Of a stretch of DNA of 64,000 nucleotides, positions 12,943 to 19,500 are shown in pieces. Origin of the DNA: Zygnema circumcarinatum SAG 698-1b (lineage: Eukaryota; Plantae; Zygnematophyceae). The translations under genes were made by a program, and so were the position numbers. The notes under the pieces were generated by a model. That model was not told the origin of the DNA. It did no database searches and saw only the letters and a program-made list of their open reading frames with translations. The stretch spans positions 2,046,001-2,110,000 of the forward strand of contig CM074806.1 of assembly GCA_037447605.1 (NCBI GenBank). Direction: 5' to 3'. Numbering within the stretch: position 1 is the first letter of the stretch; every line of letters begins with the position of its first letter.

Positions 12943-13901
12943 AGCTTGCAACTTCTGCGATAGCTGTGTGACTTACAAAGTCTTTCAATATCCCCAAGCG
13001 CCAAGAAATACCTTAACTATCCACTTCGCGTGCCCTTGCAGGTGGTGCAAGCGGATGGAATTGATACAAAAAAATTGATAATCATGTTTTTGCCTGCGAC
13101 CTCCTTTCAACACCTCTCCCCCCCCTCCTCCTCTCCCTTATGCCAAAGGCATGTCGCCAACGCCAGTCTATGAAACGCCACGCCACGCCACGCCACGCCA
13201 CGGAATCAGCGCATCCTTCAGCCAGCCATCTTCTCTGCTGCCAAGCCTCTGTTCTGCATGTCACTTCATGGCCTCCCCACGGAGACTGTGCGCAGCTGAA
13301 CGACCCTTCCGGCAGCCTCAGTCATAGCCGTGCAGACGCCAACCTTGAAAAACTGATGGGCGGCGTGACCCCGGACTCTATCCTCTCTCCTGATGGTTAC
13401 GGTATATGCCAAGACAGAGTTCTATGCAAGAGGGGAAGGGGGGATGCAAGCAGCGAAGGGATGCACGCAAGGGAGGGGAAAGAGAACAGACGCGGCATTG
13501 AGGTTCTAGTTACCAGTTCCTCATGCTGATCTTGTCAATGTACATTTGATGGCCTTGCCATCGTGAGTTCAAACAAACATCTTTTACCTTCTGAAGGGAA
13601 GAGAAGGCATGAGTGGGCGTCGACCTCACAGTGGGCGATGCCCAGGAATGGGCCCATGGCCATGCCAGTCATGGTAGCATGCCCATGCTTCTCTGTTCTC
13701 ATGTCCCATCAAACTGTACGGTAAGGCACTGCTGTACTGTACTGTACTGTTACAGTACAGTACTGTAAATGTGTGGGGCATGGCATGAGGGTACGGTATG
13801 GTCGACGGATGGCATGCCTTCGTCAGGCCTGCCATGCGCACAGTACGGTCCGGTGTTCGATATTGTACGGTATTCGATATTTAACCCGCGGGTGTGCAAC
13901 A

Positions 13902-13911
13902 TTTAGGGTTT
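13902..13911 (-). promoter_or_regulatory. Telo-box (AAACCCTAAA) in the 5' region of the SR45a-like gene
   Basis: TTTAGGGTTT lies 68 bp upstream of the ATG at 13979. Telo-boxes are established promoter/5' UTR elements of plant RNA-processing and translation genes. Confidence 0.55.
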
Positions 13912-13978
13912 GGCCTTGACTTACGCCGGAGGCGGCTTACTCTTTAGCTTTCGGAGGGCGCTGTTTAGGGTGAGCGGC

Positions 13979-15567
13979 ATGGCGGACCTCGGCATTGATC
14001 TGGAGAGGCCAGCAACCGCAGATGTTGATGATGAGGCTGAGCGGGAGGAAGATATTGAGGATTTGGATACACAAGAAAAGGAGAGGCCCCAGGAGCATCT
14101 GAAAGACGCCGCTCCTGAAGTTGATGGAGCCGAGAAGGAGGCGGTCGAGGATCACGGAATGGAGACTGAAGGCCAAAAAGAGAACGGAAGTTCAATCAAA
14201 GAAGTAACAGATGCAAAGATTGAGGATGCAATAGTTGTTGGTGAGAAGGAGAAAGCCCATGGCGGTGGACACGAAGATGGCGATGGGAAGCAAGAGCAGC
14301 GAGAGGGCAAGAAGAGAGAGGAAAGAAGGAAGGATAAGGAGCCCGAGGACAGGCGTAAATATGATAAGGGTGGAGAGGAACGTCGCCGAGCTGACAGAGA
14401 GGAAGGGGACGGGAGGCGCAGCGACCGCGGTGTTAGAGAGAGAGATCGTGACAGATACGAGGAGAGGAGTGGGAAAAGGGGAGATGCAGACGATGATGTG
14501 CCACCTGGAGATCCGGAAGAGCTGGATGAACGGGATCGGCGGAAGGATGATCGTTCACCCCCTCGCAAGGAATACCGGGATCGTTCACGGAGCCCTGCGT
14601 ATAGGGATAGACGCTCATTCTCCCCAAGGTAGGTAATGAACTTGTCATGGTGTGTAGGTATTGCAATTTAATGATAACGTGCATGCTGAGTAGAAATAAA
14701 TTTGCGCACGGAAGAAGGAGAAGAAGAAGACGAAGAATAAGAAGAGATTAACATTTTTCATGCTTAGAAGGTGGTCGCTGGTGACTTCGTTTGCCAAGCT
14801 GAGGAATCCTTTAGTATTAACAGAGAAACTGACTCGTTTCTGCAGCAGTTGCAAAAACGAGCAACCCCGTGATGTAGTTTAGTGATATGCAGACTGCTGT
14901 CGGTGGCCCACTGGATTTACCAGTGGGCCCATTGGATATACCAGTATTTCTGAAGCATAATTTCAGGAGGGCACGCATATACAGATATTAAGAATTATTT
15001 TTGAAGATAATTTTCACGTGATGCCAGCAGATTGTTAGATGTTTGACTTATTTTCAAGTTTATGCATTATTTGCCTGCAGACGTGACGACCGTTATGACC
15101 GCAGTGATAGACACGATCGACATGACCGGAGGCGGTCTCCACCTCGAGATCGTTACAGGTCTCCTCCTCGTCGAGATCACGGCGCTCGTGGTCGGAAATG
15201 GTCACCTCCTCGCAATCGTCACAATGGAGTGGGCCGACCAGGGAACAACCTCTTCATTGCGGGGTTCAATTTTATAACTACGGAGAAGGATCTGGAACGA
15301 AAGTTTAGTCGTTATGGCCGCGTCTTGGATGTCCGCATCGTTCGGGATGCAAGGTAATGTCTTGCAGTATCACCGACACGGCGCTTTTCTATTGCATGAA
15401 CTTGAAGAAAGCTTTGAATTTCGTCTAGCAAGGTGTTGCGTCATGGGGCAAACTGTATGGCTTCCTCCACAGTGGAAGTCATTTGTGTACTTTTTTCCTC
15501 GGAATCTTGGCTACCTCACGTATTGACCGAGCCCCGATAGAAACATCACAGAGTTATGATGCGCAAG

Positions 15568-15608
<41 letters not shown>

Positions 15609-16097
15609 GAGCGAGAGAGAGAGAGTCACCATTTAACAACGGAATGTTGCTGTGAGGAACGTATAGAGCAGAAGAACGGGTTCTTCTTGAGGATGTGTGT
15701 TTTCATCCAATTGTACTCCTCCAGGGGCGGCAGTTAGCACCTTTCTTTTGGAGCCTAAGAAGATAATTCTGCTGAATTCTACATCGGAGTCCGAATTTCT
15801 TTCATGAGGTTGCTTATGGCGACCTTACAATGTTTAGCGAGTCCAAAGCAACTGAAGTATTATGTATGGAAGGTGTCACTTAGCAAGTGAGGCCTTCAAG
15901 CCATCAGGTACGGCAGCCCCTGATAGCTTGATTGTGGGCCTATCTGCTGCCTCAGGAGTGGGGAGTCTCGCGGTTTTGGCTTCCTCACCATGGAGCATGA
16001 CGAGGACGCTGATGATGCAATTCGGGCTCTTGATCAGACGGAGTGGCATGGTCGGACCGTGCTAGTTGAAAAGGCCAAGACTGACAGACGGCCGTAG
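13979..16097 (+). CDS. SR45a/TRA2-like RRM protein with acidic and Arg/Asp/Ser-rich N-terminus, isoform using terminal exon A (354 aa)
   Basis: Exons 13979-14628, 15081-15353 and 15956-16097 (both introns phase 2). The RRM reads PGNNLFIAGF (RNP2)...TTEKDLERKFSRYGRVLDVRIVRDAR|SGESRGFGFL (RNP1)...DDAIRALDQTEWHGRTVLVEKAK. RSPP/RSRSP repeats lie upstream. Confidence 0.9.
15570..15625 (+). repeat. (GA)n microsatellite in intron 2 of the SR45a-like gene
   Basis: About 28 GA units with two interruptions. Confidence 0.95.
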
Positions 16098-16424
16098 TTT
16101 CTTAGCAAGAACTTCATAGGTGACATGTCCGTAGCCACTCTTTGAGCGGCATTAATCAGCCTCAGAAAGGTTGTTGTCGACTTTTTGTGTTGTCTAAAAA
16201 GTTCTTTATGGATTATCCTCAATACGCGCCATTCAGTCATGACATGGCACTTTTAGGTTAGATACGTGAAATGGTTGTCATTCGGATACGCAGGAGAGGA
16301 TCTTGTCGTATCTGAGAATTGTTATACGGACACTGCACGGTAATTGTTGAAATGCAATTTAGGAAAAGGACTCATATGTTGATTGTGCTGACAGATAATC
16401 TATGGGAGATGTTGGTGGATGCAG

Positions 16425-16566
16425 GACAAGGGAGTCGCGCGGTTTTGGGTTTGTGGCGATGGACACGGATGCAGAAGCCGATGATGCCATAGACGCCTTG
16501 GACCAGACTGAATGGCATGGGCGGGTTGTCCTGGTGGAGAAAGCCAGAACAGGGGGTAGAACATAA
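16425..16566 (+). CDS. Alternative terminal exon B of the SR45a-like gene (paralogous second half of the RRM)
   Basis: Acceptor gatgcag|G in the same phase (2) and of the same length (142 nt) as exon A. It encodes TRESRGFGFVAMDTDAEADDAIDALDQTEWHGRVVLVEKARTGGRT*, 32/46 aa identical to exon A. Confidence 0.85.
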
Positions 16567-19500
16567 GCTGGAGATAGCAAAAGTTTTGTGTGATTTGGTC
16601 TCTCTGTCTGCACGACATTTTGGCATTTTCTCACTCAGTCGTAAACACTGGAATATGGGCAGGAGAATTATGTTGGACCACTTGCTGGAGGATGGCATTC
16701 CTTTCGATAAATAGTTGGTCCTGTCAGCTGAACCTGTGTTATTGCAAATTGGAGAAGGTGTGATCCAGGGGGAGGCAGGGAATGTCGTGGCAGGATAGCA
16801 AGGCGCCACGATTCAGCGCCACATGGCGTACTGACCACATCAGCTGCGCAGTATAGGAGCGCTGCCTTTGTTCCTTTCCTCGACACTCGATACTGGCTTG
16901 TGTGGAGATGTTGGATTTAAAGCCTTCTTTCAACACCTGCCTTCTGATAGGCAAGTGCAGGTCATGGCAGCTTTTGTAAGCGGGGTTCAGACTGTTCCTA
17001 GTAGGTAATCTTTCAACATAGTGATTGGTCTTGCATATTGTTTCAACTCAGCCAGGGTGTTTTTTTCTGCACGTATGGAATGTCTATCAAACGATCAGGA
17101 GAGGCTAAACCTGTGTCTCGCTGGTATGTGTCTTGATTTGATTGACAGCATTTTTGGCATTCAATGCAGATAACGTTGAGGCAGCAATTTGCTGATGTCA
17201 ATATGGGTCGCAGTGATTCTTGGGATAAGCCACAGGGTCTGTACATTGGACTTCTTTCTATGGGGCAAAGAGACCAAACTGGTTGGTGCACTTTTCTGTT
17301 CAGGTCTAAAGAACCATGTACCTTGAGAAATGTGCTCCTTTAGAACGTTCCAAGTGAAAGGGCTGGAGAATCTGTGCCTGCCAACGTTGGATTTGTTCCA
17401 GTTCCCTTTGCCTGTTCCATTCCGAAGTACGGACCTGTACGATGCAGTTCCAGTCGGGCTGAGCCTACGGAACCCGTTCGGAATCATGTACCTGTCATCC
17501 TCAAACTCACGTGTCATTCTGCAACAGGAAAGCACACCTCCCAAAATCATGTTGCTGCCCTTTGCAGGACGGTCTCCATACCGTCCTGTTCTGACTCCTT
17601 GTGCAGAGCCATTGCAGAAAGCCAGTCACTTGGTCTGTGAGCCATGCCTGGGTCGGTTTTGCAAAGAATGAGGGTTACCTATGCAAGGGCGGCTGTCTGT
17701 TTTCTTGAGAGTGGTGAAGAATGCGATCCTGTTCATACCCATTTGTTTGTCTACGAAACCGGGCTCTTGTTTTAGACCTTGTCATTTCAAAGATTAGCCT
17801 GATGACCTGAGCAGAGGTCTTTTTTGTTTGTCCTATTGAGAGGAACACCTGCAAATGGAGTACTAAACTGGAGTCTCGAAATCATGATTGTCTTGTCTTA
17901 GAAATTGGAAGGACTGGTCTTCTGAAACTGCAGAGGTACTTATGGGAAGAAGACGAACGTAGCACCGCCTTTCATAGAGCATGGCATATGTCTCATATAT
18001 CAATGGAGGTCTGCACGGAGTGTTCGTTGCAGTTCACTTGTTCTTGAATGCGTTCAGGCTGCACCGAGAGTGAGTCCTGGGCTCTGTTCAGATATTTTTA
18101 AAATAGCCTGCAAATCTTTACTGTCGAGCGAAGGGGAATTTTCAAGTGTCGCGCAGGGTCTACTTTTCTGTAGCACAAAAGAATAGGTATTTTTAACAAA
18201 AAATAGGGCTTGGTCTCTCACGTTCCTTAAGCATGTCCCCTCCTTGCTCAAGCCCCATCTATTGTCTTGCTGTTGTTCGGGCTGGTCGAGCTATCGAAGC
18301 TCTCACGTTGAACGAAGGTGATCATTTCCTTTGCCGGAAAATAGGAGACTTCATTAAACATTAAGGTTCTCGATCCATGTAAGGCAGTAGCTGTGCAAAA
18401 GACTGAATTATCGGCCATGATGCAGGGCAGGGTGGTTTGCAGCTTACGAACCCCTCACATCTTTGTTGGTTCTGAGTTGTAAATATATTGTCAATGTCGA
18501 CATTTTTGAGGTGCAGAGCAGGTTCACTCAGTGATGCTGAGTCAAGTCCACTCCTATTGCAACTGTTAATCTCTTTGCTGTTTGAGGTGATACGAATCTT
18601 CTATTGTTGTAGGTAAAGTTGCAACTGCAGAAAAGCTTGATTTAATCTACTCCACTTACACTGTCGCATACCACGTAACAAGGGTTGGAATAGTTTTGAT
18701 ATTAGGAGAACAATGCCTTGGGCAGGTTGCCAACTGCATGACACCTGGCATCAGTTATGTGTGCGAAGTCTAGTGTTTCGGTGGTGTATGGTATCGTCTC
18801 ACTTTTACCTTCTCTCTGGAAGATAATGCTGTGGTTTTCTGGAAATGTCTTGAAAAAAAGTTTAATGGTTCATAATGCCTTGATGAGCTGTAGTTAAACA
18901 TTCTTGCAATCGGAGGGGAGGCTGATTTACTTTCATCCCTCGCAAGTTTTTAAACCTCGTGAAATAATGTTTTTGAACATATCGTTCAAACACAGCCCTC
19001 TGCTGTGTGGAGCCGCTGGCTTGCAAGCGATCATCTGATTCTGACGGAAGGGGTCAAATGTCCATTTCCATTTCCTTCACATCCATTTCCTCGTCATTTC
19101 CTTCACGCTCCCGCGCGCTACGTTTGTCACGGACCGTCTGATGGCCTTCCGCCCCTCCCTCTGCGCCCACGTGGCCCACATCGGCGACCTCCGTGGGCTG
19201 CTTCAAGAGCCGTGTCCTTGACTCGGGCTTCCAAGCAGAGTTCCACTCATAGCTCTCCTCTTTCGTCTTTGGGTCCCGTTCGAGCGGTTTGGTTTCTCGT
19301 GGTTCCCCATGCTGGCTTTGCCTAGTCCCGTACATTCGATGGCGCATACAGTACGCCCGTCCCCCTGCCTGTGCGGGCCCCACACGCCACCGCGAGGACC
19401 TTCGCGGAAGAAACGCGCGCCCCCGCCGATCCGCCCTCCCACGTGCGTTTCCGTACGGTCTTTGTCGTGCTCCGCACTCCGCCCCCCCGCCGCGAACCGC

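What the first reader, a model, noticed from the sequence alone, without database searches (positions are those of the whole stretch)
15956..16566. Tandemly duplicated, mutually exclusive terminal exons give an SR45a-like splicing factor two alternative RRM halves
Seen: after the phase-2 intron donor at 15354 there are two CAG|G acceptors (15956 and 16425). Each is followed by exactly 142 nt encoding RNP1 to the end of the RRM, then its own stop. The peptides are 32/46 identical. Conserved residues carry many synonymous changes (GAT CAG ACG GAG TGG CAT GGT vs GAC CAG ACT GAA TGG CAT GGG), with no indels or stops. Known: RNP1 and the following helix and strand shape RRM RNA and protein contacts. 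Inference: both exons are under purifying selection, and exon or poly(A) choice swaps half of one RRM (SGESRGFGFLTMEHDED..IRA..KTDRRP vs TRESRGFGFVAMDTDAE..IDA..RTGGRT). I know of no description of this switch for this plant family.
Basis: partly seen in the sequence, partly recalled or inferred. Interest (0 to 1): 0.8.

Follow-up and report, generated by a model that had tools for sequence, protein, structure and literature searches.

The report
Twin exons swap half an RNA-binding domain
A gene for an RNA-binding protein in a green alga related to land plants makes two equally long proteins with different back halves of the RNA-binding domain, by keeping or skipping a duplicated exon that has its own stop codon; the same layout is known from human KRAS 4A/4B, but checked cases are few in the plant lineage.

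Summary
Two 142-nt coding segments (15956-16097 and 16425-16566) each follow a CAG|G acceptor. Each completes the RRM begun in exon 2 (15081-15353) and ends in a stop at the same codon. They match at 91/142 nt and 32/46 aa. Third codon positions are saturated (28% identity).

They also show a third junction, 16119>16425.

So exon A is not a terminal exon. It is a 164-nt cassette exon, and its stop lies 22 nt before its own donor. Exon A is always spliced on to exon B, and nothing points to a poly(A) site between them. Exon B is the only terminal exon and is coding only when A is skipped. This is the KRAS 4A/4B layout. Inclusion of A varies from about 10% to 50% between samples.

Exon A is the ancestral-like copy and B the derived one. 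Neutral drift cannot explain B's intact frame.

The pair is lineage-restricted. Riccia and Klebsormidium have one copy. The only close relative has A followed by a non-coding exon and shows no sign of skipping A.

The protein is not SR45a in architecture, because it has no C-terminal RS domain.

Verdict: real, and a new member of a known kind.

The parts
13979..14628 (+). Exon 1, coding part from the ATG: acidic then RS/RD/RE-rich region. Contigs start at 13937-13969.
   Evidence: ORF and translation. Junction 14628|15081, GT..AG, seen in all four runs.
15081..15353 (+). Exon 2: RS-like stretch plus the first half of the RRM (beta1-alpha1-beta2). It ends in phase 2 inside the beta2-beta3 loop.
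   Evidence: Pfam RRM_1 positions 1-33. Junctions. Secondary structure of the relative's RRM model.
15956..16119 (+). Exon A: 164-nt cassette exon. It codes the ancestral-like second half of the RRM, has its stop TAG at 16095-16097, then 22 nt, then the donor GT at 16120.
   Evidence: Junctions 15353>15956 (depth X1 524, X2 74, X4 95) and 16119>16425 (X1 471, X2 36, X3 47, X4 62). Closer than B to 95 of 99 homologues.
16120..16424 (+). Intron between A and B (305 nt, GT..AG). It is retained only at low depth, and its polypyrimidine tract is weak (36% Y in the last 25 nt).
   Evidence: contig 16091-16452 at depth 8-26..
16425..16566 (+). Coding start of terminal exon B: the derived second half of the RRM, with stop TAA at 16564-16566. 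It is translated only when A is skipped.
   Evidence: Junction 15353>16425 in all four runs (depth 500, 156, 295, 179). Translation. Pfam RRM_1 29.0 bits.
16567..18704 (+). Long 3' UTR of exon B. Contigs end at 18413-18708. The relative's mRNA also has a UTR of about 2.1 kb.
   Evidence: Contigs 16423-18704 (X1) and 16423-18510 (X3). L001 is 3391 nt with its stop at 1281.
16951..17303 (+). Optional 3'-UTR intron (353 nt, GC..AG: TAG|GCAAGT ... TTCAG|G). It is spliced in part of the transcripts in X2 and X4. The same junction is spliced in the relative's mRNA.
   Evidence: Joint 16948>17302 with 3 ambiguous letters. Sequence. L001 crosses the homologous point.
17304..17545 (+). Conserved non-coding 3'-UTR element just after the UTR intron.
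   Evidence: 72% identity over 248 nt by BLASTN, with long perfect runs, to L001:1756-1991. Gaps of 1, 2, 3 and 8 nt argue against coding. No Rfam match.

Best explanation
One gene for an RS-rich protein with a single C-terminal RRM makes two 354-residue proteins by keeping or skipping a 164-nt cassette exon, A. Exon A is an old tandem copy of the start of the terminal exon, B. When A is kept, translation ends at A's own stop, 22 nt before the A-B junction. That is too close to the junction to be expected to trigger junction-dependent mRNA decay. B then serves as 3' UTR. When A is skipped, exon 2 joins B in the same phase, and B supplies the loop3-beta3(RNP1)-alpha2-beta4-tail half of the RRM. 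The two halves differ at 14 of 46 residues. The RNP1 aromatic residues and the hydrophobic core are kept. The changes lie in loop 3 (SG>TR), RNP1 positions 6-7 (LT>VA), helix alpha2 (including a charge reversal R>D), beta4 (T>V) and the last six residues. Shown here: the gene model, all three junctions, comparable abundance of the two forms, and selection on B's reading frame. Inferred: that both proteins are made, and that they differ in RNA or partner binding.
For: All junctions are GT..AG and present in four runs.

Inclusion of A, taken as exon A depth over exon 2 depth, is about 0.51, 0.34, 0.10 and 0.37 in X1-X4. Both forms are therefore major, and the ratio varies.

Both ORFs are 354 aa. 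Synonymous sites are saturated while pN is 0.19. Neutral drift to that divergence never kept the frame and the identity in 20,000 trials. A and B fit Pfam RRM_1 equally well.

The exon boundary falls in the beta2-beta3 loop of a confident model of the relative's RRM (pLDDT 89).

The relative serves as a natural control.
- Its mRNA has A, then 21 nt, then an exon that begins like B (GACCAGGGAG against GACAAGGGAG) but does not code an RRM half.
- Its contigs run through the exon 2-A junction without a branch.
- In the window species, contigs break at the end of exon 2 in every run.
- Skipping is thus seen where B codes, and not where it does not.

The KRAS 4A/4B layout is the same (PMC5945503).
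Against: There is no protein-level evidence.

The RNA evidence comes from assembled contigs, not reads. Depths are therefore rough, and linkage between junctions is inferred from flow. Sample conditions are coded and unknown.

No orthologue of B was found, so selection on B rests on one paralogous comparison. A recent neutral phase of up to about 0.2-0.3 substitutions per site cannot be excluded.

The only close relative does without a coding B. Both isoforms carry a long 3' UTR with an optional intron, which could make either one subject to mRNA decay.
Confidence: 0.68

Rival explanations
1. Skipping of exon A is unproductive or regulatory splicing, used to hold down the level of the canonical A protein. 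The B reading frame is then a relic that no longer matters as a protein.
For: Genes for SR and Tra2-type splicing regulators commonly regulate themselves by alternative splicing (background knowledge; reviews listed). The relative has no coding B. The 3' UTR is long, carries an optional conserved intron and a conserved element, which suggests control at the mRNA level. A short recent neutral phase for B is not excluded.
Against: B keeps the exact length, the phase, the stop position, the RNP1 motif and every core residue, although its silent sites are saturated. The homologous stretch in the relative has lost all coding sense over a shorter time. The skipped form is the majority mRNA in three of four samples, which is unexpected for a form destined for decay.
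Confidence: 0.17
2. Inclusion of exon A is the down-regulating event, like a poison exon. It adds 164 nt and lengthens the 3' UTR, which marks the mRNA for decay, and B is the main working form.
For: A is the cassette exon and B is present in every transcript. Long 3' UTRs can trigger decay in plants (background knowledge).
Against: A is the form that every other streptophyte uses. A differs from the relative's A at only 2 of 46 residues. Its stop sits 22 nt before the junction in the window species and 21 nt in the relative, which is the spacing expected to escape junction-dependent decay. The A form reaches about half of all transcripts in X1. The UTR of the B form is only 164 nt shorter.
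Confidence: 0.08
3. One reading: two alternative terminal exons, chosen by splice site together with poly(A) site, with A-only mRNAs ending between 16097 and 16425.
For: Each segment ends in its own stop.
Against: The donor at 16119|16120 is used. Depth into A (524 in X1) is accounted for by the A>B junction (471) plus retained intron (26). The A-B intron is covered only by a low-depth contig that runs straight through it.
Confidence: 0.03

Closest known systems
KRAS exons 4A/4B (vertebrates)
   Same: In both genes the last coding exon has a homologous partner. The upstream copy is a cassette exon with its own in-frame stop near its 3' end and is spliced on to the downstream copy. The downstream copy is present in both mRNAs and is translated only when the upstream one is skipped (PMC5945503). 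Both forms keep the domain intact (PMC9882654).
   Different: Here the swapped part is half of an RRM in an RS-rich RNA-binding protein, not the end of a GTPase plus its membrane anchor. The organism is a streptophyte alga. The upstream copy is the ancestral-like one. The pair is so far known from one species, whereas KRAS 4A is conserved across jawed vertebrates.
Classical mutually exclusive homologous exons from tandem exon duplication (Kondrashov and Koonin 2001; Letunic et al. 2002, as cited in PMC9882654; Abascal et al. 2015, PMC4465641)
   Same: The origin is a tandem duplication. The two exons have equal length and phase, the substitution is domain-preserving, and both copies are under purifying selection.
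   Different: The mature mRNA holds either A+B or B alone, never A alone. Exclusivity is enforced by a stop codon, not by the splicing machinery, RNA structure or decay of double-inclusion products.
SR45a / Tra2 splicing regulators and their regulated cassette exons
   Same: An RS-rich region next to a single RRM with weak Tra2 similarity (E about 1e-8, 34-38% identity), and a cassette exon that carries a stop codon.
   Different: There is no C-terminal RS domain. The stop in the cassette exon is not premature: it sits at the normal end of the protein and 22 nt from the junction. The reported SR45a splice variants of maize and Arabidopsis remove domains rather than swap homologous halves (PMC8195531).

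Membership tests
SR45a (plant Tra2-like SR protein) | A single RRM | tested here: met
   Pfam RRM_1, split across exon 2 (profile positions 1-33) and A or B (35-69).
SR45a (plant Tra2-like SR protein) | RS domains on both sides of the RRM | tested here: not met
   An N-terminal RS/RD-rich region is present. The protein ends 9-10 residues after beta4 in both isoforms, and so do all homologues from Klebsormidium to angiosperms.
SR45a (plant Tra2-like SR protein) | Orthology to Arabidopsis SR45a or animal Tra2 | tested here: inconclusive
   Source names of the homologues are mixed (SRRM2-like, rsd1-like, CWC21-like, one 'SR45a'). Tra2 proteins match only at E about 1e-8. PDB hits are generic RRMs. 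No Arabidopsis SR45a sequence was available by reference.
Strict mutually exclusive exons | Adjacent homologous exons of equal coding length and phase | tested here: met
   142 nt each, the same phase, 64% nt and 70% aa identity.
Strict mutually exclusive exons | Each mature mRNA holds exactly one of the two | tested here: not met
   The junction 16119>16425 joins A to B. B is in all transcripts.
KRAS 4A/4B-type switch (stop-bearing homologous cassette exon before the terminal exon) | The upstream copy has an in-frame stop and its own donor, and is spliced to the downstream copy | tested here: met
   Stop at 16095-16097, donor at 16119|16120, junction present in four runs.
KRAS 4A/4B-type switch (stop-bearing homologous cassette exon before the terminal exon) | Skipping the upstream copy puts the downstream copy in frame | tested here: met
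   Junction 15353>16425 in four runs. The resulting ORF is 354 aa.
KRAS 4A/4B-type switch (stop-bearing homologous cassette exon before the terminal exon) | Both protein forms exist | not testable with these tools
   No proteome data were available.
Alternative last exons coupled to alternative polyadenylation | A used poly(A) site after the first terminal exon | tested here: not met
   No 3' ends and no fall in flow between A and B. Caveat: contigs do not show poly(A) tails.
Poison exon coupled to mRNA decay | A premature stop more than about 50 nt before a downstream exon junction | tested here: not met
   A's stop is at the normal C-terminus and 22 nt before the A-B junction (21 nt in the relative). 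The optional UTR intron lies far downstream of both stops and affects both forms alike.

The most novel reading that the evidence does not exclude
The two RRM versions give one splicing-type regulator two RNA or partner specificities, and the cell sets their ratio by condition (inclusion ranged about five-fold here). This gene would also be one of many homologous-exon switches in this alga. Other notes of this scan list several more candidates in the same genome. If that holds, substitution splicing of duplicated exons, held to be rare in the plant lineage, would be a regular tool in at least one streptophyte alga.
Probability: 0.25. Interest if true: 0.7.

Novelty: new member of a known kind. 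Interest (0 to 1): 0.45.

Why it matters
Checked cases of alternatively spliced homologous exons that change a protein domain without breaking it are few in the plant lineage. The plant-versus-animal review I opened treats them only in passing (PMC6581706). Here such a switch sits in an RNA-binding, probably splicing-related protein, so it could change the splicing or RNA-binding programme of the cell. The case comes with a built-in comparison: two RRMs that share their first half and differ at 14 known positions. That makes a clean experiment on RRM specificity possible. It also shows how a stop codon placed close to a donor site can turn a duplicated terminal exon into a protein-level either/or switch without any special splicing mechanism.

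Tried and rejected
- A protein search with exon 1 alone (216 aa) gave 740 candidates, none significant. The region is low in complexity.
- A protein search with the 54-aa ORF over exon B gave no candidate. No B-type exon was found in any other organism. This blank is weak, because only short ORFs could be hit.
- The window's own protein is not in the protein collections searched.
- I tested whether the relative's exon after A is a decayed B. Local alignment to B is no better than shuffles (score 20 against 20.0 +/- 3.2). Alignment to its own A is only suggestive (26 against 19.9 +/- 3.2, 28 of 500 shuffles as good). Only the first 10 nt (9/10 identical to B's start) and the position argue for homology.
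- A tree of the 42-residue halves leaves B's place unresolved.
- Rfam found nothing in 13400-19000.
- No paper mentions the relative's run numbers, so its species stays unknown.
- Weak GT sites just before each stop (16094, 16556) would give exons of 138 and 131 nt, which are incompatible in frame. No junction uses them. The idea of two internal mutually exclusive exons was dropped.
- The reading 'B belongs to another paralogue' was dropped. B is joined to this gene's exon 2 in all runs, and the window has no further copy.

Full report
**1. What is in the sequence**

The + strand between 13979 and about 18700 holds one gene.
- Exon 1 (ATG 13979 to 14628) codes an acidic then RS/RD-rich region.
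- Exon 2 (15081-15353) codes more RS-like sequence and the first half of an RRM. It ends in phase 2 at AAG|GTAATG.
- Two segments follow, 15956-16097 (A) and 16425-16566 (B). Each lies behind a CAG|G acceptor and is 142 nt long up to and including its stop.
- Either segment closes a 354-codon frame.
- A and B match at 91/142 nt and 32/46 aa, without indels.
- Nei-Gojobori gives pS 0.91 and pN 0.19.
- Identity by codon position is 0.78, 0.85 and 0.28.
- Both fit the second half of Pfam RRM_1 equally well, at 29.4 and 29.0 bits.
- The window holds no third copy.
- Outside the exons only faint similarity is left: a branch-point-like CTGAYAG upstream, and TAGCAA(G/A)A and GTGA downstream.

**2. 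What the RNA shows**

I laid the assembled contigs of four public runs of the same organism on 13400-18900. Exons are covered 100 to 1000 times deeper than introns, so these are RNA libraries.

Junctions found, all GT..AG:

| Junction | X1 | X2 | X3 | X4 |
|---|---|---|---|---|
| 14628>15081 | present | present | present | present |
| 15353>15956 | 524 | 74 | 0 | 95 |
| 15353>16425 | 500 | 156 | 295 | 179 |
| 16119>16425 | 471 | 36 | 47 | 62 |

The last junction changes the picture.
- Exon A has a donor (TAG|GTGACA) 22 nt after its stop and is spliced on to B.
- In X1 the depth entering A (524) is accounted for by the A>B junction (471) plus a low-depth retained intron (26).
- Hence there is no sign of transcripts ending between A and B.
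- A is a 164-nt cassette exon. B is the single terminal exon and is present in every transcript.
- The ratio of exon A depth to exon 2 depth is 0.51, 0.34, 0.10 and 0.37 in the four runs. Both forms are major and the ratio varies about five-fold.

Caveat: these are contigs, not reads. Depths are rough, and the sample conditions are hidden from me.

**3. The 3' end**

- Contigs run from 16423 to 18413-18708.
- An optional 353-nt intron is spliced in part of the transcripts of X2 and X4. The reported joint has three ambiguous letters, and only the placement 16951-17303 gives canonical-type ends (GC..AG, TAG|GCAAGT).
- The relative's mRNA is spliced at the homologous point and also has a UTR of about 2.1 kb.
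- Just after this intron lies a stretch, 17304-17545, with 72% identity over 248 nt to the relative. That is about the level of coding exon 2 (75%).
- This stretch has long perfect runs and gaps of 1, 2, 3 and 8 nt, so it is conserved non-coding sequence. Rfam has no match.

**4. The family**

An exhaustive profile search with exon 2 found 370 relatives. The listed ones range from Klebsormidium and Coleochaete through a liverwort, ferns and a conifer to many flowering plants.

All have a variable RS-rich N-terminal part and end about 46 residues after the exon 2 boundary. An RRM at the very C-terminus is therefore the family's architecture.

Source names are inconsistent: SRRM2-like, rsd1-like, CWC21-like, and once SR45a. 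Tra2 proteins match at about 1e-8. Solved structures give only generic RRM hits. SR45a proper has a second RS domain after the RRM. This family does not, so I do not file it as SR45a.

**5. Which copy is which**

- A is closer than B to 95 of 99 homologues, with a mean of 30.7 against 24.6 identities over 41 residues.
- At most of the 14 differing positions A has the family consensus (G2, E16, R23, K41), and B is derived.
- A few B states (V10, T14, D23, V34) are shared with Klebsormidium.
- Both A and B, and the relative's A, have H in TEWHGR, where 0 of 98 other homologues do. This points to a duplication inside this algal lineage, or to past gene conversion.
- A tree of the 42 residues cannot place B.

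**6. How old, and is B kept by selection?**

The only close relative in the collections is P0001, from RNA contigs of three runs.
- Its exon A differs from the window's at 2 of 46 residues. Third-position identity between them is 0.57.
- A against B within the window is at 0.28, which is saturation. If rates are alike, the duplication predates the split of the two species.
- In the relative's mRNA, A is followed by 21 nt and then an exon that starts GACCAGGGAG (B starts GACAAGGGAG).
- That exon has roughly the same length as B with its UTR up to the intron, and it ends in the homologous UTR intron. It does not code an RRM half. Skipping A there would give a truncated RRM with a 41-residue nonsense tail.
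- All three contigs of the relative run through the exon 2-A junction without a branch. In the window species, contigs break at the end of exon 2 in every run.
- The simplest history: an ancestral A-B pair; decay of B in the relative, with A kept constitutive; retention of a coding B together with frequent skipping of A in the window species. Homology of the relative's exon to B beyond its first 10 nt is not statistically supported, so this history is an inference.
- Riccia and two Klebsormidium loci have a single copy, with the intron at the same place.
- Neutral simulation: at 0.5 or more substitutions per site, none of 20,000 copies kept an open frame, the stop in place and at least 32/46 identity. 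The observed silent-site divergence implies about 1.5. A last neutral phase of up to 0.2-0.3 cannot be ruled out.

**7. How it most likely works**

A confident AlphaFold model of the relative's RRM (pLDDT 89.4) puts the exon boundary in the beta2-beta3 loop. The swapped part is loop 3, beta3 (RNP1), alpha2, beta4 and the tail.

Between A and B:
- The RNP1 aromatic residues and the core residues stay.
- The changes are SG>TR in loop 3, LT>VA at RNP1 positions 6-7, EH.ED>DT.AE before and in alpha2, R>D on alpha2, T>V in beta4, K>R after it, and DRRP>GGRT at the end.
- From general knowledge of RRMs, loop 3, the sheet face and the C-terminal extension touch RNA, and alpha2 is a common protein contact. 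A change in RNA or partner preference is plausible but untested.

The stop of A lies 22 nt before the junction (21 nt in the relative). That is under the distance of roughly 50 nt at which a downstream junction triggers decay, by background knowledge. The A form should therefore be a normal mRNA, in keeping with its abundance.

B's acceptor has a poor pyrimidine tract (36%, against 60% for A). What sets the ratio is unknown. Self-regulation by the protein is an obvious guess.

**8. Comparison with what is known**

The layout is that of KRAS 4A/4B. There, 4A is a cassette exon with a stop near its end. 4B is present in both mRNAs and is untranslated when 4A is kept, and the authors note that the exons are not mutually exclusive at the mRNA level (PMC5945503). 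The KRAS pair also arose by exon duplication (PMC9882654).

My paper searches found no description of such a switch in an RRM or in this plant family. The maize and Arabidopsis SR45a variants remove domains rather than swap halves (PMC8195531). These searches cover open-access text only.

Other notes of this scan list further candidate homologous-exon pairs in the same genome and call the organism a streptophyte alga. I did not check those notes.

**9. Verdict**

- The mechanism is corrected from 'two terminal exons with poly(A) choice' to 'a stop-bearing duplicated cassette exon before a homologous terminal exon'.
- The protein is corrected from 'SR45a-like' to 'RS-rich protein with a C-terminal RRM'.
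- It is a new member of a known kind, restricted so far to one species, with good sequence and RNA support and no protein or functional data.
- Interest is moderate.

Noticed in passing
window 17304-17545 (and L001:1756-1991): A 3'-UTR stretch just after the optional UTR intron is about as conserved between the two algae as coding exon 2. It has perfect runs of more than 20 nt and gaps that are not multiples of three. It is probably a regulatory RNA element. No Rfam family matches.
   Followed up: partly
window 16951-17303: A GC-AG intron in the 3' UTR, far downstream of both stops, is spliced in some transcripts and retained in others, and is conserved in the relative. Splicing it should expose both isoforms to junction-dependent mRNA decay.
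   Followed up: partly
window 15352-15357: The donor of intron 2 reads AAG|GTAA, so retention of the intron ends the frame at once (agg taa), in the middle of the RRM. Many database homologues (for example P0010, P0011, P0019, P0027) are predicted proteins that stop exactly there, so this may be a conserved feature of the family.
   Followed up: partly
window 13400-13584: A very highly expressed exon of a neighbouring gene (depth 1000-1750). Contigs leave the window sequence at 13584 and at 13538-13545, which look like splice junctions to exons outside the stretch I laid. The gene was not identified.
   Followed up: no
window 15566-15625: A (GA)n microsatellite of about 60 nt lies in intron 2. 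The read tool skipped it as a repeat.
   Followed up: no
window 13727-13770: A run of TGTAC units followed by its inverted copy (tgtactgtactgtactgt tacagtacagtactgta) lies about 200 nt upstream of the transcript start.
   Followed up: no
same genome, other windows (notes s1-343938, s1-321699, s1-319548 and others): Other notes of this scan report several more tandem homologous exon pairs with either/or use in this genome (ferroportin, RGLG, a B3 protein, SnRK2, YchF and more). If they hold, this alga uses the device unusually often. A genome-wide count would be worthwhile.
   Followed up: no
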